In this document: one piece after another, positions 6,469-16,600 of the stretch
Layout of the letters: the number at the start of each line of letters is the position of its first letter
How positions within the stretch are numbered: the stretch's first letter is position 1
Assembly (NCBI GenBank): GCA_964199315.1
Contig: OZ116701.1
Location: 4,526,001-4,590,000 of the forward strand
Length of the DNA stretch: 64,000 nt
Source of the DNA: Orbicella franksi
Taxonomy: Eukaryota
Direction: 5' to 3'
Position numbers and translations under genes: made by a program
Notes under the pieces: generated by a model
Seen by the model: the letters and a program-made list of their open reading frames with translations, nothing else
What the model was told of the DNA's origin: nothing
Database searches by the model: none

Positions 6469-6732
6469 TGTACAAAACACCGTACAAATACTTGAAGGGG
6501 ATAAGCTAGGGCGACCGGACAAAAAGTTCGATAAAGCAATCATCTTTTTGAGGCCGAGCTTTGATTTTGTTAACTTCATTTTCATGAAGCTTTCCGGAGA
6601 AAACTACATCAGATTTTTCTGTTGTTTAGTTAACCGACAAGCAGGCGCAAAAGTTAAAACGGTCAGTAAAAACACAAATTTTCTGTCTTTCACGTCATTT
6701 TAAAACGTCAAACGAGTCCTGATACTAAGCCA

Positions 6733-6738
6733 TTTATT
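6733..6738 (-). promoter_or_regulatory. Candidate polyadenylation signal of the downstream DMRT gene
   Basis: AATAAA on the minus strand about 200 nt after the stop codon at 6941. Confidence 0.45.
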
Positions 6739-6940
6739 GGAAAATAGTTTATTTTCTGCCAAATAATCAAACTTATATCCCGGGAAATGATGATAGATGC
6801 GAATGCAGCCGTAACACTACTGGGAAACTTTTCCACCAGGACTCCTACTGGCACAAAGCAAAAGGCAAAAAAGAAATGGATTTAAAATATGATATACATG
6901 TAACGCTAAAAATACCTTTCAGTCTAAAAGTAATTATTGA

Positions 6941-9900
6941 TTATGTCTCTTTGAAACATTTTCCACACGAGCTACAAAAGTTGCTGGTTGGCGAACATTT
7001 CGTTGAACATTCCGAGCAAACCTTCCCAACAATATTTGTTTGTTCAGTGCCTGGAGCCACATTGTAAACATGCTCCTTTTCACTTGCTGTACAGTTTGGT
7101 CTTAGGCTACAGTTTTGTTGGTGCATGTACTCGACCATGGGGTAAGAGAAGCCTGGTGGCGAACCGTAGATAGGGTAGTGCCCAGACCTCATGGGGCCTT
7201 GATAAGGCGGTCGGGTTTGGCGAGCAATAAAGCCTGGATGCACGCCTGGGTTATAGTGCACTACAGGACTTTCAGGAGATTTCAGAGAAGCCATGGCCTT
7301 TTCGTGACTAGGTAGAACGCACTCTATAACTCTTAACACGTCCCCATGACAACCTTTTAAAATTAGTTCCAGTACACTTCGCTTCTGAGTTGGAAAGAGT
7401 CTGGTGAGGAGGTCTAGAGGATGCAGTCTTGCACGATAGCTGGCAATGTGATTTCCAGGACTCTTGAGTTGCTCGTCGGCGGTTTCATCAGCAGAAGCGC
7501 GGGAATCTTCTCTTTGCTTATCTTGATCGACCGGCTGTTGATATATCTGGCAGATGCTACCATTTGTTTCGCCATTTGTCTCGTCACTGTCATAAAACAC
7601 ACTATCATCTATGGCCTCGGGAGGGGAAGGATAAGATGATCCCACTTCTGAGAATTTGCGCTTTGATCCTACAATGATAAATACAAAGTTATAATGCAAT
7701 TGTTTACTAAATCATTGCAATCGAAATTAGTTTCTTTTCACAAAATCAAGTAATCAGTAAGGTGACGAGAATAAGGAAAATTATCAATTGGAGAATGTCG
7801 GGCTGATTGACGCAGGACTGAAAAATTAGAAACAGTTTGGGGTGGATCTCAACGGTTTCCAACATTTTTCAGTTCCCCCTCCTTTGTAGTATAGTGTGAA
7901 TATCTTCCGATCATTGACAAACTAAATATGGTCAATCTCGTGACTCAAAAAAGGTAACCATAACAACAGCAGAGCCCGTTTAACACCATTTGACTTTGCA
8001 TTAAGTGTTTATAACTCAAAAACAAAACCTTTGATCCCTGTTTTTTTCATGGAATTGTAGCACGCAATTTAAAAAAACAACCTTTTATCAAGTTTTTAAA
8101 AAAAATCATGGGAGGTGGTTCAAAAACCTCGAATAGCAGATTTGCACGATAGCGCAGGGGGCAGCCCCTGACGATACCGTCATTTGACTACAACTACCAG
8201 AATTCCTTTCGTTTTTTCTTTATTATTTAAATTTTGAATTCCCAGATGGGTTTAAATAACAATTGCCCTAATTAGCACGAGAAACAGAAAAACTGAAAGG
8301 ATTCCGGTATTATAGCCAAATGACGCCATCAAGCAAATCGCCTATCAATGTTTCTTTGCTGGAAAAGAACACTGAAAAACAAATAGATTCCATGTTGCCG
8401 GCGTCTGTTCAGTAATTGATCACAGAAGACGTCAAAATGTGGTATGAACATGAGTGACACACTTGGCTATCACCTCGTGTGCCACAACAACGTGGAATCT
8501 ATTTGTTTTATATAAGAAAGAAACAAAACAAACACTTAATGACGTCATGTATGCGTCTGTCCTCCAGTTGATCATGAGTAAGAGCAAGAGACGATGGACC
8601 AATCAAAATGCGAGAACTAATTTGACTTATTATATAAATAGTATTAACACTGTTAATACTGTTAAGTCTTTACAGAGCTGTTGATTTCTTTTTGAAAGAG
8701 TTGTGGTGATTGATGGCTTTCAAACGAACTTGTGAAAACTGTCAATCTAATTAAAATCGAATAGAGGGAGTAAGTTTCTAAAGGAACTGTGGTGCTGCTA
8801 ACTAAACTCGAGCTGTCTTGCCTTGTCTTCTGTTGAAACAGAAATTACTAAATGTTTGATCTATCAACGAAAATTGAGAAAATTTCCTTAACTGGGGTTG
8901 TGAGTCATAAAATGAAATAACTTTTTCATTCCAACAAAAACCGAAGATTGTTGAATATTGTATTGTATTCGGATAAGAGACTTCCTTGGTTGGGCATGTC
9001 TAGAAAACCAGCATAGCGAGTAGTGTACTACGATTATAGGAAGAGGCAAAACTCAGTATGGATCAACTCGATCGCGTATTTGCTCGCATCCCATTGGCTA
9101 AGATAAACAATGGTTGCTGTTCTTATCCAATAGGATGCAAATCAGCGAGTTTCTCCAGTCCGGTCGAGGTTTGTCCCGAAAGCGAATAAACGCGACCGCA
9201 AGCATTGCGAGAAGTGGCAAATAGTTCCCGATCAGCCTGAAAAGCACTTCGGTTAGCCTAAATGGCTCGCGGGCTGGCCTAAATAGTCCGCTATATAATG
9301 ATCATGAAGAGGGTAACATAAAGTTCTGTTTAGATTAGCCGCGACTGTTGGACACTATTCCCTGTTCGGCTGGCATGATTACAGCTATCAAAAAGCTCTT
9401 AAGGAAATGTAGGAAGAGATAAAAACGTTTGCTGAGCCGAAGCAAAAGGATAAGCGACTCTAAATCGGTCTGCAATAGCGCAGCCTGATGTAACAAGAAT
9501 TTCCAACCAAACACTCCAAAAAAACTGACAGCTAACCACAATGGATACAAATGTTGTTAGTAACTGTATAGATTTACATTTAGGAAAGTAAACACTTTTT
9601 AGAATGCCGCAGATTTTTTGTTTGCTAATCGAGAACACCTTTCAAACGCAAGTTCAATAGCGTGTTTTCCCAGCGCTTTCAGTCAGTGTCCGTTTGAGTC
9701 TAGCTTAAGACTTCTTAGACTTCCACACTTTTCTTCTTGAGAGCTAAAACAACGCTGTTATGAGAACTAAAAAAGATACGCTTTGAATATACACTTGGTA
9801 GATTGTGAAGATGCGAATCAAAGAAAAAGAACTCTGCAATCATTTAGTAAATATTGCTTTCCAATTTCTTTACAAATTGTTCCCATCCCAAACTGATCCG

Positions 9901-10404
9901 AGAGTAGCCGAGCTACCCTATACCCCATTTATAAAAGCAAGCGAAAAGTCGCCATGTTAGCTGAATTTTTTTAAGGAACTATTTAATTTTCTCACCTTGG
10001 CCTGATGAAAGTGAAGCGTGTTTGGCCCTTGCTTCAACCATGATATCCAGCTTATCTGGAGTCGTGTTGTTATTGTTTGTATCAACTTGTAACGTTGCCG
10101 GACAAATAATGTTTGAAAGTGACTCACTCGAAGGATGCGGTGACCTGTAAACAACACAAGCGGGTTCAACGCTAACATCATCTACAAACTGGCTTCTCGG
10201 CGGTTCGTCGTCATCTTCTCGCTTGAGCGCTATTTGCGCCGCCATAAGCCGCTGCCGTTCGATGATCAAGCTGCATTTTGAACATGAACAGTCTTTCCAC
10301 GGACACTCGTTCTTGTGTCCTTTCAATTTCTGCGTTATACCGTGATTCCGGCATCTCGCACAGCGCGGTCTCGGTTGAGAGCGACCGGTATTTTCATCGG
10401 ACAT
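6941..10404 (-). CDS. DMRT: DMRT-family transcription factor (DM + DMA domains) with C-terminal zinc ribbon; 2 exons, 378 aa
   Basis: Exon 1 10404-9996 (ATG in AACCATG context; DM domain CARCRNHG...GHK..C.W.DC.C.KC...ERQR.MAAQ; donor G|GTGAG). Exon 2 7668-6941 (acceptor TTATCATTGTAG|GA; DMA domain [34 protein letters not shown] at about 7423-7304). The phase-1 junction is in frame; total 1137 nt. Confidence 0.93.
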
Positions 10405-13400
10405 GGTTGTTCGAAACAGTTGGGTTTCCTCTCTTGGTACTTGCGACAGCTTGGACTAAAACTGTTAGTTTTTCAATTTGTGCTTTTCCAATTAATTACC
10501 GTCAAACAGTTGATATATCACCTCTGGTATTTCTACTGTAAATGAGTTCTATTGTTTGCGTTGCAATTGATTCGCTTCGTGATTGGAGGAAGTCGGATTA
10601 GCGCCATTTTCTTTCAGCAATAGCTTGGTGCTTTTCATTAGCTAGGTGCTTGTATTAGTAAGAACAAATCTATTTTTATGGTAATATGCAAACAACCCGA
10701 TAAAGTTATTCTTTCATTTTATTTTCTCTTTAGACCAACTGGATGTTGCGACTTATAGTTGTCTTGAGGCGAGGTCTAACCTATAGATTATAAAACTTTC
10801 ACAAGCAGAGTAACGATCAGTCGGTCAGAATAAAACGAAGATCTAAAACCGACTCTCTTAATTTTCTTGTCATTCTGTGTTTACCTTAAGCTTTCTTTCA
10901 ATTTGAATATAAATAGCGCTTCCTCTGGGTATTGCTTTTAAATATCAGAAAGATATTTTTATTCAAAAAATGCGACAGCTTTTAGACGGTGTCTTTGTGC
11001 GAAGAGTAATGACCGTCTGCCTTTTGTCTCTTCCACTCGCATTATTTCGCTGCTGACGGCAGACCTTTACTCCCTTCCACTTGTCTTTCAATATATAGTA
11101 AATGAACTTCACTTAGTTGCTGTCACTTAGGCTTTGTTTAATTTCCGTTCAATAGTGAACACGACCTACTTCAGCTTCAACTTCACTCGGAGATCACGCG
11201 CCATGTCACAAGAGCAACATTGAAGGAAAACAAAGGACTTACAGCCATATTAAAATCTTGTCCATGGCGTTATGTTTTCGGATAGTTTTTATCCCTTGAT
11301 GTATTCTTTGGCGCTGACAGCAAAAATTGAGGATAGCAATTCAATTCGTTCGGGTAAAAACACTATGCACACCTCACGCAATGTTAGTTGTTTGTTTGTT
11401 TGTTTTTTTCCACGATGTTTGAAGTTTTAAGTCCCTCCCTTGTGCCGTGAACAACGTGTCTTACACGCGTTAAAAATAGTGCAGCGGCTTGAAGTTACAA
11501 TCTTTATTGCATTATTTTTGAAGAGTGAAGACCTACGACGATACAAGTTTTCATCTAGACGAATAAAATCTATAAATACTCTTTTTAGAATACTTTCTAT
11601 ACTAATACTAGTTTGCTTGAAGATAGGACGTGACTACAATACTAATGTACTTCTGTCTACAAGATTAACTGAAAGAGAAAGTTGCTTTTATCGTAAAACG
11701 CGCGCTCCGCTGAATGCCATTGCTAGAAAAAGTCCATAACTCATAACAGCTTGTCTATGTTATAGTCGCCGGTATTGTCCAATATTACAGTATAGATTAG
11801 AGAGTTTTCAATTATCTCTTGCATTATTTTGTTGATTTTACCGTTGCTCAACCGTGTTTTACAAAGCTCTTTTAAACAAGCCATTCAGTTTTAGGAGATA
11901 AGAAAAGCATTGACAACAATACCTTTTTATACCAAATAACTGCATTAAATCGGCTGGACTACATTTTCGAGATCCTGAGCTGATTCATCTGTATTAGTTA
12001 ATGCGAATTTATGATTATTACTTTATGCTATTTTATTATATATTCATCTATTTACCAATATTTATGTTAACCCTTTAACGTGCCGACTCAAGTAGTCAAT
12101 GTTTAGTTCCTCCTTACTGTTTCAAGATGTTATCAGGTAGGCAGGTGATGAGATAAATTCATTAACTGATGTCTTGGTGTAGTCACCAAATTCTCCCAAC
12201 ACGGTCATTGAAAGAAATAATTGGCAATCAGAGGGAGAAATGAAGTTCTGATCTCATGACTACAAGAGTTAACACGTGAACCTAAGAGACTCGAACATTT
12301 ACCTTGAAATAGAATATTTCCCAGGGATTTTACACTACACTGTATACTGAATTACCTTCATCAGTAGATTACATCATGAATTTACTCCAAGGCGAATGCC
12401 CGGGTTCATTTCACGGTTTATATTTATTAAAATAAAGAAACGACAGAATGTCGCCAAAAAAATATTTCACAAAACTAAATATATTACAAAGCCTTTTTAA
12501 AGTCATTTATGGTGTCACGAATTATTTTCACTACTGTTAATTTTACCCAACGGCAAAAGAAAAAAACTACATCTACGCTAATTACCTATCAAGCTACAAG
12601 ATCTTACAGAAGCAGGTGTCTGGTCGGCCTGTCCATAGCTCTCTAAGACAGGCAGCTTACAATGTCTTGGACCGGCCTGTCTATAGCTCGGCCTAATCAA
12701 CTATTTCTAAGACAGGCACGCTAACTACCACGGTGCTATTTACTATTCTAGTTGAGTAAGAAAATAGTTTTATGGTACAAGCTCGCATTTTTGTCCAATT
12801 AACGTTTCGGGTTATTTACATGCACTTTACTGTTCGTTCCATAAAGGCTTTTTTACATGTTGGCTTCGTAAAACATAAGAAAAGATTTAATTTTGTATAA
12901 TTAAATGGCAAAAAATGAAATCAGCCACTGCAATTTGTATGTACATCTCAAAAAAGACTACCACTAATGCTCTCTTTCCATAGCATTTTCTACTCCCATC
13001 AGTCAGGTACTTCAGCTGACATATTACGGGTAGGAGGGTCGTTATTCTTACTACAACGTCTTGAAAGCCTTGAATATTTAACGCGGTCTACCGTGCATTC
13101 TGAAGACCATCACTGAACAGGGTATAGCTAATCATATCATCTCTATTCCTATGATTTCATTTCTTTGCCACATAAGACTGAAGTAAAAAAAGCTTAAAAA
13201 TTATAATACAATGTTGTAGAAATATATCTCTAAGAAGCATTATGAAGAAGGTACTTGAGTACTTCATATGGGAAAGAATGATATTTACATGTTCTACAAT
13301 TCGTACTATCTTTAGGCAGCTTGGCTGATGGAACTGGATCGGAGCTCGAGTGAAAGGCAAATTCAGAAGTCGCTCTGATACACTCGAGTGTATATTGTTT

Positions 13401-13638: not shown

Positions 13639-16600
13639 TCAAGCTTTTTCGTCAGCCTCACTTTTTGGAGAACCGCGGGGAGAGAGGGCCGGTGGGCTGC
13701 GGTTATTTCTTGGTAGGACCCGGTCCCCGGAAAGGACTCGTCCAGGCGTGCTCATGGTCATTAAGGCGGCAGTTGCCGACCGCATACTTTGACTGTACCG
13801 CATGTCTTCAAGGTGGGGTATTTTTGCCAAAGCTGGAATCGTCGACATCGGTAGCGAGTTGTGCTCTGAGATGGACGGTATCAGCGGAGTTGGCAGGTCC
13901 GGGTTTTGCCGCTTTGAGGGATCTTTCAGTACAGGCATGGGAGCAGTTCCCGGATAATAAACACATCCGGGGCATTGGCCACTGGCACACTTGGATGCCG
14001 CATGGTACTCGACAGCGCTTAATGGTATGCTGTGAGGAATTGTGGGAGAGAGAGGTGAGAAAGCCGAATAGCTAGAAGGTGGCGGAGGGCCTGGGAAGAG
14101 GCCGCGTGGTACACTGGCAAGTATTTGCCCTCGGGCGAGGGCTTCCTCATGACTTGGAAGAACGGTCTCTATTGTTTGAATCACATCACCTCCGCACCCC
14201 TTTAATATCAGCTCCAGAACGTTTCGTTTCTGCTCCGGGAAGAGCCGTATTAAGATGTTCATGTACCTTGAATGGTCCGAAGTTGACATCACTTTGCCGT
14301 GTTCGCCATTGTTCAGAGAAACCTTCTCATTTCTTTGCCGTTTTGTGTCTGGTGACATTCTAGGCCGTCGCTCGTCCTCTTCTTCGTCTCGTTCACGTTT
14401 CCACCTATTGGGCAAAGCTTCACCGCTGTTTTCCATTTGAAATTCTGAAAAGAAAAATGATGATTATTTGAGAGCTATTATCAGAAACTACTGGCGAAGA
14501 CACAACGAAATATTCTCGGCTATTACCAATAATCGAATCAATTTTAACAAATGGCCATATTTGCGAAATATAGTTTATATCATCCTCTCAAAATATCCAA
14601 CATTTCTGAAACGTTACACGCCAAGGTTTAACTTAAAACAAGACGTTTTATCTGTTGCTTAAAACTGACCACCCTTGAAGTTGTCAGGTTGCTCGGAGAT
14701 TGAACGTAGTTTGTCTCTGAACATGGCATGGGTTGGCAAAATAAAGCTAAATTGAGCAGAAAAGCGTCGAACGTTCTTCCTTCAAACGATTGTGATAAAT
14801 GATGGTAATAAAAAATACAGCCTACAAGATTTCCAATCTACTTGTTAAATTAAAGCAAGCAAAAGCTTGAACTAAGCCATCCATTTGAATTCTAATCTTT
14901 TACCGTCTGATAAGATCTTCATAATACCGGATAAAAAAAATATCCAAAACTAGACTACAATGACCAATGACTCATTCACATACAGAGTAATATCGGACTA
15001 CAGAAAGATTACCTTCAGTGCACTAAGATTGGCTCTTTTTGGTTTCGTGCAAGTCTGCGGAGGGCGCTTTTGCTTTCGTGACTGAACGCGATCCGATGTT
15101 AAATGACGATTAAGTTTCCTTTTTAATATATGCAAATGACCAGTATAGGCTTACAAGAAAAGGCTAAATCCACGGTCCCATTATTTATGTTTTAAATGTC
15201 TTTGAGAACTAAGATGGAACAGTTTGAGATCTATTAATTTTCTCTCAAGTTTAAACTCTCTTGCGGTCCATCTCCATTTTGAGCCAGCTTGACACAGAAT
15301 ACAATTTCCAAAAAAATAATTTGTCTAAATCCTTTGGGAAATAACTCAAACTCTTACAGATTACAATTTTGGCCTATTCTAGATGCTAGCATTTAATTTC
15401 AAGAAGTTAGATAGAACCTGGTTTTTCTCCTTACTTGCTTCACCCATGCAACCAACCAACTAAACAAAAGGTAGCTTTAAATTACCTGCCTTGACGTGTG
15501 GCAAGATTCTGTTTAAGTCTTTTGTAAGCACTGTTGGGGTAAATGCTCAGCTAGAACTTCCTGATTCTAAAGACATTTTGTCAGAATGCGCGGTGAAAGT
15601 AGGCAGTATTTTGGAGACCACTGGCAGCGTTTACAAAAAGGCGGTCTACAATAAACAATGCAAAAACTGAACATTTTTTTCATTAGGATTGACACACTGC
15701 AAGCGGTGTTTTTCTGCCATTGATTCAAAAAGCCTGTCAATTTAAAACACTTCCCTTTGGTTTAGAGACGAAAAGAAATCAGTGCAAGTTCGATAAAACC
15801 CAGCGGAAAAAAAAAAAAGAGATTTAAACAGTCGAGTTAATGTAATAACCAACAAAAATGGTGCAAAGAGGGGAAATCGGTTATTAACTTAATGGTTGAA
15901 AAAGGATAATTTTCATATGAATTATAAAATTGGAACTTGTTCCAAAGTCCAAACTTATAACTGGCAGTCATTCGTCCATAGCTTAACACTCAAATGGTTT
16001 TCTATGGCTTAAACATCAACCAGCTTTAAACTAGTAGCCTTATTGAGGTAATGAGGTAATTAGCGATAAAATTGATAAAGAAATCGCAGCTGGCCTTAAG
16101 GCCAAGAAGCAACTATAAGCTCTATGGTTCAGCCTCCGCATGAATGAATGCTTTCACTAAATCAACGACTGAGTTCACCGCAAAGCCTGATGCAGGCTAA
16201 GTTGTTTTTCTTTTGAAGGAATATCGTATGCAAAAATAAGGTTCATTTTCCGCACGACAGAGCAAATACTCGAATGGAACATACCGTATTCCCTGACGAC
16301 CGCTTACAGGTAACCAAGCTCAATATGCTGACCCACTGTTTTGAGGAAATTGGAAGTGATAGCAATAGAAATTAAAACGTAAACCAAAGAATTTCTTCCC
16401 TCAAATTTCTACCGCATATAGTTTGACCTTTATCCTTTTGTAGTCGAGATTATCTAAAATTTTGCTCAATGTCGCTTTGTCTTTTGCCTTGTGGTCAGTA
16501 CGAGTGCAGATGTACCGTGCTAAACGTCAACAACATTCCGTTCTACATAATAACAATAATAATAAAAATACATTAAAGCGTTCTCTGGTTAACATATTTA

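What the first reader, a model, noticed from the sequence alone, without database searches (positions are those of the whole stretch)
6941..7030. DMRT protein ending in a CxxC-x10-CxxC zinc ribbon
The downstream DMRT terminates in [29 protein letters not shown], which fits the zinc-ribbon/DZR pattern (C-x2-C-x10-C-x2-C-G with F before the second pair). DMRT proteins are normally described with DM, DMA and Dmrt1-type regions, and I know of none with a terminal zinc ribbon. The neighbouring paralogue lacks it. It lies in the same uninterrupted exon as the DMA domain, so it is not a mis-splicing artefact. DMA belongs to the UBA/CUE-like fold group, so DMA plus a zinc ribbon could form a new protein- or ubiquitin-interaction module (inference).
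Basis: partly seen in the sequence, partly recalled or inferred. Interest (0 to 1): 0.8.

Follow-up and report, generated by a model that had tools for sequence, protein, structure and literature searches.

The report
Zinc-ribbon tail on coral DMRT genes
This coral DMRT transcription factor really ends in a small, strongly conserved four-cysteine zinc ribbon, but so do most DMA-type DMRT genes of corals, anemones and jellyfish, so it is an overlooked third domain of cnidarian DMRTs, of unknown function.

Summary
On the minus strand, a two-exon DMRT gene (378 aa) carries a DM domain in exon 1 (10404-9996). Exon 2 (7668-6941) carries DMA and ends in VCSEC-x10[12 protein letters not shown].

RNA contigs show the GT..AG splice and cover exon 2 unbroken through the stop codon. 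The four ligand cysteines are conserved in 49 anthozoan orthologues (three invariant, the fourth in 48 of 49), including octocorals. dN/dS of the tail is about 0.016, against 0.10 for DMA and 0.26 for the linker.

The tail is not unique to this gene:
- Six of eight DMA exons in this genome end in the same CxxC-x10-CxxC ribbon.
- So do Nematostella DMRT C, D and E, and Clytia, Rhopilema, Porites and Exaiptasia proteins.
- About 100 named bilaterian DMA-DMRTs lack it.
- Traylor-Knowles et al. 2015 noted a "zf-ribbon-3" in NvDmrt F only, in passing.
- The scan flagged a second DMRT ribbon elsewhere in this genome (s1-207906).

By sequence it is a generic zinc ribbon (DZR/Zn_Ribbon_1), below the Pfam cut-off here. 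Its predicted fold ranks closest to RanBP2/NZF fingers, but it lacks their signature residues.

Function is untested. Acting as a binding module beside the ubiquitin-binding DMA domain is inference.

The parts
9996..10404 (-). Coding exon 1 (ATG at 10404-10402). The DM DNA-binding domain is at about 10371-10234. The exon ends in phase 1 at G 9996.
   Evidence: Pfam DM 80.3 bits, E 9e-23; sequence; RNA contigs cover 9995-10491.
7669..9995 (-). Intron of 2327 nt, GT..AG on the minus strand. It contains a multi-copy, highly represented element at about 8178-8640.
   Evidence: Splice joint 7667/8 to 9995/6 in one raw polyA read (X23) and two RNA contigs (X1, X2).
6941..7668 (-). Coding exon 2: acidic/serine-rich region, DMA, linker, zinc ribbon and stop codon (6941-6943). 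The spliced product is 378 aa.
   Evidence: ORF. The X1 contig of 904 nt is collinear over 6794-7667, with no joints inside. Spliced translation is in frame.
7316..7420 (-). DMA domain (CUE/UBA-like three-helix bundle).
   Evidence: Pfam DMA 62.5 bits; genome search hit at the same place; AF2 helices with pLDDT above 90; nearest PDB folds are CUE/UBA, weak E-values.
7037..7315 (-). Linker of about 93 residues between DMA and the ribbon. It is poorly conserved and predicted to be disordered.
   Evidence: Block identity 0.32-0.60 among 49 orthologues; dN/dS 0.26; pLDDT 44-58.
6944..7036 (-). Conserved C-terminal block [31 protein letters not shown], the zinc-ribbon domain. Ligand Cys codons are at 7018-7016, 7009-7007, 6976-6974 and 6967-6965. 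Two further, non-invariant Cys are at 6997-6995 and 6958-6956.
   Evidence: Ligand Cys conserved 1.00/1.00/1.00/0.98 in 49 orthologues and invariant across paralogues; dN/dS 0.016; AF2 pLDDT 83-91; DZR/Zn_Ribbon_1 hits.
6794..6940 (-). 3' UTR (at least this far). It overlaps a repeated element at about 6782-6922.
   Evidence: X1 RNA contig reaches 6794; high summed depth and loose ends at 6787/6820.

Best explanation
The tail is a genuine, expressed, one-zinc C4 zinc-ribbon domain. It sits at the C-terminus of the coral orthologue of Nematostella DMRT C. It is one copy of a third domain shared by most DMA-class DMRTs of Cnidaria. Shown: the sequence, the splicing, transcription through the tail, invariance of the four cysteines, very low dN/dS, presence in several paralogue groups and four cnidarian classes, and absence from about 100 named bilaterian DMA-DMRTs. 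Predicted: a two-knuckle beta-ribbon tethered to the DMA three-helix bundle by a disordered linker of about 90 residues. Inferred mechanism: the ribbon is a small binding module that works alongside the ubiquitin-binding DMA domain. Most likely it supplies a second contact to ubiquitin, a ubiquitin-like protein or a ubiquitylated partner, as CUE plus C-terminal NZF do in TAB2/3. It would thereby tune the stability or partner choice of the transcription factor. I put the reality of the domain at about 0.95, and the ubiquitin or ubiquitylated-partner mechanism at about 0.4.
For: Gene model and RNA. Conservation: 46 homologues all keep the tail. In 49 anthozoan orthologues the ligand Cys are 1.00/1.00/1.00/0.98 conserved, and ribbon block identity (0.63-0.80) is comparable to DMA (0.71-0.88), against 0.25-0.48 for most of the flanking sequence (one block 0.60). 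Nei-Gojobori dN/dS is 0.016 for the ribbon, 0.10 for DMA and 0.26 for the linker, with TGT/TGC synonymous toggling. Paralogues: six of eight DMA exons in G000 end in C-x2-C-x10-C-x2-C, and the four Cys are the only invariant ribbon columns. Taxa: octocorals, Montipora and Pocillopora; Nematostella D and E, Clytia and Exaiptasia; Porites, Actinia and Rhopilema. Fold: pLDDT 83-91. In an exhaustive search of 48,161 chains, the 15 best are all RanBP2/NZF-type fingers (Npl4 NZF Z 4.3, Nup153 4.3, TAB2 NZF 4.0). Foldseek gives the same families. DMA binds mono-ubiquitin at about 400 uM and controls DMD-4 stability (PMC7538159).
Against: There is no binding evidence. The NZF ubiquitin-contact residues (T-F after the second Cys, and a hydrophobic residue two positions after the third Cys) and the RanBP2 signature (W before the first Cys, N at +4) are absent here and in the paralogues (sequences). 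No tail hits Pfam zf-RanBP. Structural Z-scores of 3-4 and Foldseek E-values above 0.7 are weak in absolute terms for a 33-residue domain. The AF2 model gives no sign that DMA and the ribbon pack together (pTM 0.33). Residues outside the four Cys differ between paralogue groups, so one common ligand surface is not evident.
Confidence: 0.5

Rival explanations
1. The ribbon binds nucleic acid, either single-stranded RNA as in ZRANB2, FUS and RBM5 RanBP2-type fingers, or DNA as an accessory to the DM domain.
For: RNA-binding RanBP2-type fingers are among the top structural matches (RBM5 Z 4.1, FUS 3.6, ZRANB2 3.3; ZRANB2-RNA complex at rank 2). The protein is a DNA-binding transcription factor. 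Many paralogue ribbons are rich in Lys and Arg.
Against: The aromatic and Asn/Arg residues that read GGU in ZRANB2-type fingers are not present. No basic or aromatic position is conserved across paralogues apart from the core Phe. There is no Pfam zf-RanBP hit.
Confidence: 0.22
2. The ribbon docks a specific protein partner unrelated to ubiquitin. Possibilities include a co-regulator, Ran-GDP as for Nup153/RanBP2 fingers, or a ribosomal-protein-type ligand as for MDM2. Each paralogue group may have its own partner.
For: Within the DMRT C orthologue group almost every tail residue is fixed, with dN/dS 0.016, whereas paralogue groups differ outside the Cys. That pattern fits group-specific interfaces. 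Nup153/RanBP2-Ran and MDM2-RPL11 fingers rank as high as the NZFs.
Against: No candidate partner is known. It does not explain the constant pairing with DMA and the constant position 4-12 residues from the C-terminus.
Confidence: 0.23
3. The tail is not functional protein. It would be a chance cysteine-rich read-on of the exon, or real transcripts end or splice before it.
For: Pfam scores for this gene's tail are below the gathering cut-offs. RNA depth is low, at 2-8x.
Against: RNA contigs and raw reads run through the tail and stop codon with no internal joints. Full-length mRNA-derived models in Montipora, Nematostella and Actinia include it. The Cys are conserved across Hexacorallia and Octocorallia, and the tail has the lowest dN/dS in the gene. 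The motif is unique in the six-frame window.
Confidence: 0.03

Closest known systems
Nematostella vectensis DMRT C (NCBI 'DMRTA2', UniRef 'DMRT C'; P0026) and coral orthologues (Montipora XP_068682976.1, Pocillopora RMX45572.1)
   Same: Same architecture of DM, DMA and C-terminal C-x2-C-x10-C-x2-C ribbon. Exon 2 is 44-69% identical. They group together in the DM+DMA tree.
   Different: The DM domain of the window gene is more divergent ([14 protein letters not shown] where the orthologues have VVSYLKGHKRYCRW). None of these database entries is annotated with a ribbon.
NvDmrt F 'zf-ribbon-3 domain' (Traylor-Knowles et al. 2015, PMC4433094)
   Same: The only published mention found of a zinc ribbon on a DMRT. 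It is a cnidarian DMA-type DMRT, and its role was stated to be unknown.
   Different: It was reported for one paralogue only. The paper did not note that C, D and E carry one too, that it is cnidarian-wide, or that it is conserved. NvDmrt F itself was not retrieved or examined here.
Pfam zinc-ribbon families DZR (PF12773), Zn_Ribbon_1 (PF13240) and Zn_ribbon_3 (PF13248)
   Same: Two CxxC knuckles, a Phe before the third Cys, and a Gly after the fourth (FCxxCG). Of 53 DMRT tails, 51 hit DZR, 43 hit Zn_Ribbon_1 and 35 hit Zn_ribbon_3 at E<=0.01.
   Different: Those families are generic motifs of unknown function. The best solved-structure sequence match here is an uncharacterised 'putative regulatory protein' (9sfa_A). 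This gene's tail scores below their gathering cut-offs. Of the eight tails of this genome checked against the cut-offs, only paralogue L006 passes (27.1 against 25).
RanBP2-type / NZF zinc fingers (Npl4, TAB2/3, TRABID, HOIL-1L, Nup153, ZRANB2, MDM2)
   Same: Identical Cys spacing C-x2-C-x10-C-x2-C. They are the best structural matches in an exhaustive PDB search (Z 4.3-3.3).
   Different: There is no W-x-C, no N at +4 and no T-F/hydrophobic ubiquitin-contact triad. Pfam zf-RanBP does not match. This is a likeness of fold, not demonstrated membership.
TAB2/TAB3 (N-terminal CUE domain plus C-terminal NZF)
   Same: A CUE-type ubiquitin-binding helical domain is followed, after a long flexible stretch, by a C4 ribbon of the same spacing at the extreme C-terminus. 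This comparison rests on established knowledge of TAB2/3. The TAB2 NZF is structural hit 5.
   Different: TAB2/3 are kinase adaptors without a DNA-binding domain, and their NZF carries the T-F motif. The resemblance is architectural analogy only.

Membership tests
DMRT transcription factors, DMA subclass | DM DNA-binding domain | tested here: met
   Pfam PF00751 80.3 bits, cut-off 27.
DMRT transcription factors, DMA subclass | DMA domain C-terminal to DM | tested here: met
   Pfam PF03474 62.5 bits, cut-off 23. The exons are joined in RNA.
Zinc ribbon (Pfam DZR / Zn_Ribbon_1 class) | Two CxxC knuckles, about 10 residues apart, giving four zinc ligands | tested here: met
   C-x2-C-x10-C-x2-C at 7018-6965. 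The four Cys are invariant in paralogues and conserved 1.00/1.00/1.00/0.98 in orthologues.
Zinc ribbon (Pfam DZR / Zn_Ribbon_1 class) | Score above the Pfam gathering cut-off | tested here: not met
   This gene scores DZR 23-23.5 against 27.3 and Zn_Ribbon_1 20-21 against 25. Paralogue L006 passes Zn_Ribbon_1 at 27.1.
Zinc ribbon (Pfam DZR / Zn_Ribbon_1 class) | Beta-hairpin ribbon fold | tested here: met
   The AF2 tail model has mean pLDDT 83, with the core blocks at 90-91 and short paired strands. In the longer model the ribbon is at 84. This is a prediction only.
Zinc ribbon (Pfam DZR / Zn_Ribbon_1 class) | Binds one zinc ion | not testable with these tools
   Needs metal analysis of recombinant protein.
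RanBP2-type / NZF zinc finger | Spacing C-x2(4)-C-x10-C-x2-C | tested here: met
   Exact x10 spacing in 82 distinct DMRT ribbon cores found by a pattern that required x10.
RanBP2-type / NZF zinc finger | W two residues before the first Cys and N four residues after the second Cys | tested here: not met
   This gene has K-V-C and C-S-T-K-C. The paralogues have F/V-C and C-G-x-x-x.
RanBP2-type / NZF zinc finger | NZF ubiquitin-contact T-F after the second Cys, plus a hydrophobic residue two positions after the third Cys | tested here: not met
   S-T and S here. The positions are variable (G-R, G-T, Q-K ...) in the other groups.
RanBP2-type / NZF zinc finger | Pfam zf-RanBP (PF00641) match | tested here: not met
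   Not among the listed families for the 53 tails at E<=0.01, nor at E<=10 for this gene.
RanBP2-type / NZF zinc finger | Structural similarity | tested here: inconclusive
   The top 15 of 48,161 chains are all of this type, but Z is only 4.3-3.3 and Foldseek E is above 0.7.

The most novel reading that the evidence does not exclude
The ribbon is a divergent NZF-like second ubiquitin-binding site. Together with the CUE-like DMA domain it would form a bipartite reader of ubiquitin chains, or of a ubiquitylated partner, that sets DMRT protein stability. It would be ancestral to all cnidarian DMA-DMRTs, and possibly to the cnidarian-bilaterian ancestor with later loss in Bilateria.
Probability: 0.2. 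Interest if true: 0.7.

Novelty: new variant of a known kind. Interest (0 to 1): 0.45.

Why it matters
DMRT factors are the most widely shared regulators of sexual and neural development in animals. They are normally described as DM with or without DMA.

The evidence here points to a third, zinc-binding domain on most cnidarian DMA-type DMRTs. In this gene it is under tighter constraint than DMA itself. Standard annotation misses it because it scores below Pfam cut-offs.

DMA has recently been shown to bind ubiquitin and control DMRT stability. A conserved ribbon of NZF-like shape tethered to it therefore gives a concrete, testable handle on how DMRT proteins are regulated post-translationally in non-bilaterians. 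It also bears on what was gained in Cnidaria or lost in Bilateria.

It is a modest extension of a known family, not a new system.

Tried and rejected
- **Complex prediction.** Coral ubiquitin, the 40-residue tail and Zn gave score 0.00 and no verdict. This counts neither for nor against binding.
- **Foldseek against PDB.** With the 167-residue model and with the tail model, nothing reached E<=0.001. Only the ranking is informative.
- **ESM Atlas.** A feature search with the tail gave no usable hit.
- **Word-indexed search on the tail region of the Montipora orthologue.** It returned only DMRT orthologues, so no non-DMRT protein shares this particular tail.
- **Profile search of PDB sequences.** It found only generic ribbons (an uncharacterised 'putative regulatory protein' 9sfa, and bL32), with best E 1.6e-4.
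- **Naming unnamed DMA+ribbon clusters.** The attempt, made to test for non-cnidarian carriers, gave no further names. Presence in Placozoa, Porifera or Ctenophora is therefore undetermined.
- **DM+DMA tree.** Its backbone is unresolved (11 of 30 branches open), so it cannot decide between gain in Cnidaria and loss in Bilateria.
- **Rejected readings.** Chance motif is rejected. Mis-splicing or read-on is rejected. Canonical NZF or RanBP2 membership is rejected because the signature residues are absent.
Full report
**Observation**

The finding lies on the minus strand. A 252-codon ORF (7699..6941) ends in [31 protein letters not shown] followed by TAA at 6943-6941. The core C-x2-C-x10-C-x2-C occupies 7018-6965. 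A six-frame scan of the whole 64-kb window for C..C-x8-12-C..C without stops returns this site only. Pfam finds DMA in the same ORF (62.5 bits, residues 94-128, which is 7420-7316). On the tail it finds sub-threshold hits to DZR, Zn_Ribbon_1 and Zn_ribbon_3. On the 33-49-residue tail alone, DZR reaches E 6e-5 to 9e-5 and Zn_Ribbon_1 E 2.5e-4 to 6e-4. Both remain below the gathering scores.

**Gene model and expression**

- An upstream ORF (10404..9979) carries a DM domain (80.3 bits).
- The sequence predicts a donor at CAAG|GTGAG (the exon ends at 9996) and an acceptor at TTGTAG|GA (the exon starts at 7668), both in phase 1.
- Laying RNA data on 6500-10700 shows exactly this joint: a 2327-nt intron at 7669-9995 with GT..AG. 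It appears in one raw polyA read and in contigs of two independent RNA runs.
- One 904-nt RNA contig is collinear with 6794-7667, which runs through the ribbon codons, the stop codon and into the 3' UTR.
- No joint falls inside exon 2.
- In the stranded raw-read run (X21) the first mates over exon 2 lie on the plus strand, as expected for a minus-strand RNA.
- The spliced product is 378 aa.
- Depth is low (2-8x), so rare isoforms cannot be excluded.

**Conservation in orthologues**

A search with exon 2 returned 46 relatives. Every one from P0001 to P0035 ends in the same [30 protein letters not shown] tail (P0024 in degenerate form). P0036-P0045 carry CPxCxKDVPxTxRACDSCGHCF at the same place. 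Cluster look-ups name the first set as hexacorals and anemones: Montipora, Pocillopora, Nematostella 'DMRT C' and Actinia. They name the second set as octocorals: Paramuricea and Dendronephthya.

In an alignment of 49 anthozoan sequences the four ligand cysteines are conserved in 1.00, 1.00, 1.00 and 0.98 of rows. The single exception is P0024, a degenerate second copy on the same contig as P0018. Two further cysteines in the tail are not invariant (0.69 and 0.76). One of them is polymorphic, Cys to Phe at 6957, in one RNA run.

Ten-residue block identity is 0.63-0.80 in the ribbon, 0.71-0.88 in DMA, and 0.25-0.48 across most of the flanking and linker sequence, with single blocks reaching 0.55 and 0.60.

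Codon alignments of six coral orthologues give these Nei-Gojobori dN/dS values:

| Region | dN/dS |
|---|---|
| Ribbon | 0.016 |
| DMA | 0.10 |
| Linker | 0.26 |
| Pre-DMA region | 0.25 |

The Cys codons toggle between TGT and TGC. Synonymous sites in the ribbon are near saturation (pS 0.71), so the ratio is approximate, but the nonsynonymous rate (pN 0.035) is the lowest in the exon.

**The ribbon is not peculiar to this gene**

A DMA search of the window's own genome finds nine loci. Six of the eight long DMA exons end, within a few residues of the stop, in C-x2-C-x10-C-x2-C with the FCxxCG flavour: L001 (this gene), L002, L003, L005, L006 and L007. The tandem neighbour (L004, DMA at window 14161-14262) and L008 do not. 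Across these paralogues and the orthologues, the four cysteines are the only invariant ribbon columns, and the following glycine is nearly invariant.

An exhaustive profile search of 1.84 billion representatives gave 5127 hits. Pooled with the earlier homologue searches, it yields 82 distinct ribbon cores in DMA-containing proteins. They were collected with a pattern that required x10 spacing, and almost all lie 4-12 residues from the C-terminus.

Every named carrier is cnidarian:
- Nematostella DMRT C, D and E
- Clytia hemisphaerica (Hydrozoa)
- Rhopilema (Scyphozoa)
- Porites, Actinia and Exaiptasia
- the octocorals

By contrast, about 100 named bilaterian DMA-DMRTs returned by a full-length profile have no such motif after the DM domain. 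These include vertebrate DMRT3 and DMRTA2, bivalve proteins and crinoid proteins. Whether Placozoa, sponges or ctenophores carry it could not be determined.

A DM+DMA tree that excludes the ribbon columns places this gene with Nematostella DMRT C and the octocoral proteins. This group is sister to a scyphozoan ribbon-bearing group. Next to them lies the clade of the ribbon-less neighbour (SH-aLRT 85-92). That placement suggests the neighbour lost the ribbon after an old tandem duplication. The backbone is unresolved, so gain in Cnidaria and loss in Bilateria cannot be told apart.

**What kind of domain**

By sequence it belongs with the generic zinc ribbons. Of 53 tails, 51 match DZR, 43 match Zn_Ribbon_1, 35 match Zn_ribbon_3 and 9 match UPF0547 at E<=0.01. 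None of the listed families is zf-RanBP. Among the tails of this genome checked against the gathering cut-offs, only paralogue L006 passes (27.1 against 25). This explains why database entries show only DM and DMA.

AlphaFold2 models give three confident DMA helices (pLDDT above 90), a low-confidence linker and a confident ribbon: 84 in the long model, and mean 83 with the core at 90-91 in the tail-only model.

Foldseek finds nothing significant, but it ranks CUE/UBA domains for the DMA part and NZF/RanBP2 fingers for the ribbon. An exhaustive alignment against 48,161 PDB representatives puts RanBP2/NZF-type fingers in all of the first 15 places. They are Npl4 NZF, Nup153, RBM5, TAB2 NZF, MDM2, RanBP2, YAF2/RYBP, FUS, Mdm4 and ZRANB2, at Z 4.3 to 3.3. 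The Cys spacing is the same as in that family.

The defining W-x-C and N(+4) residues, and the NZF T-F/hydrophobic ubiquitin contacts, are absent here and in the paralogues. I therefore call it NZF-like in shape. I do not call it a member of that family.

**How it may work**

Published work shows that the DMA domain of C. elegans DMD-4 and of human DMRT3 binds mono-ubiquitin at about 400 uM and is needed for protein stability (PMC7538159).

A second small binding module on a flexible tether, always paired with DMA and always at the extreme C-terminus, recalls TAB2/3 (CUE plus C-terminal NZF). This comparison rests on established knowledge and is an analogy only.

My preferred reading is that the ribbon adds a second contact to ubiquitin, a ubiquitin-like protein or a ubiquitylated partner, and so tunes DMRT stability or partner choice (about 0.4). 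The rivals are nucleic-acid binding (about 0.22) and a non-ubiquitin protein partner that may differ between paralogue groups (about 0.23). The last fits the pattern of near-total fixation within an orthologue group but divergence between groups. None of these was testable here.

**Prior knowledge**

Full-text searches found one relevant statement. Traylor-Knowles et al. 2015 drew a 'zf-ribbon-3 domain' on NvDmrt F and called its role unknown (PMC4433094). No paper found describes the ribbon on DMRT C, D or E, its spread across Cnidaria, its conservation or its fold. The scan itself flagged another DMRT ribbon elsewhere in this genome (s1-207906), in line with the paralogues found.

**Verdict**

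The ubiquitin-module idea is plausible but unproven. This is a new variant of a known family and of moderate interest.

Noticed in passing
window 14161-14262 (DMA, minus) and about 20081 (DM, minus): This is the tandem paralogue upstream. Its DMA exon ends ...[10 protein letters not shown] without a ribbon, and no ribbon-like motif occurs anywhere else in the window. Its orthologues (P0220, P0187, Nematostella A2 isoform X3, Actinia P0278) also lack one. In the DM+DMA tree this clade sits next to the ribbon-bearing DMRT C and scyphozoan clade, which suggests an old loss.
   Followed up: partly
window 10362-10240 (minus); L016:1371, L018:328: The DM domain of this gene is unusually diverged in the segment after CRNHG: [14 protein letters not shown] where Montipora, Nematostella and octocorals have VVSYLKGHKRYCRW. 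Two other coral orthologues are also diverged there (VHNDLKGHKRKCEW; NHDEFSFLKGHKRYCRW). The ribbon is identical in all of them.
   Followed up: partly
window 8178-8640 (intron) and 6782-6922 (3' UTR): Summed RNA-contig depth is very high (up to about 1600 in the intron and about 140 in the UTR), with many loose ends and variant letters. These are multi-copy repeated elements, not part of the DMRT message proper.
   Followed up: no
window 6957: The C>A difference in RNA run X1 changes the sixth, non-ligand cysteine of the tail (KCF) to Phe. This agrees with that position being only 76% conserved among orthologues.
   Followed up: partly
P0024 (same 554,607-bp contig as P0018, another coral): A second copy of the DMA-ribbon exon has the fourth ligand Cys replaced (CSLNGKC), another Cys changed to Tyr, and a read-on tail. 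It is probably a decaying duplicate.
   Followed up: no
P0153 (Exaiptasia KXJ14735.1): This 505-aa protein is named 'Phosphatidylinositol 4-kinase alpha' but carries a DMA domain and a C-terminal DMRT-type ribbon. It is probably a misnamed or fused gene model.
   Followed up: no
P0095, P0097, P0098, P0103 and about 60 others: The DMA+ribbon profile also pulls proteins of 300-1300 aa with 5-19 tandem ribbons of the same FCxxCG type and no DMA. Their origin was not determined.
   Followed up: no
G000:C15:2384630-2501192: The ubiquitin search found a cluster of dozens of divergent ubiquitin-domain repeats in long open frames within about 120 kb. They are distinct from the canonical polyubiquitin at C3:8177086-8178441.
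   Followed up: no
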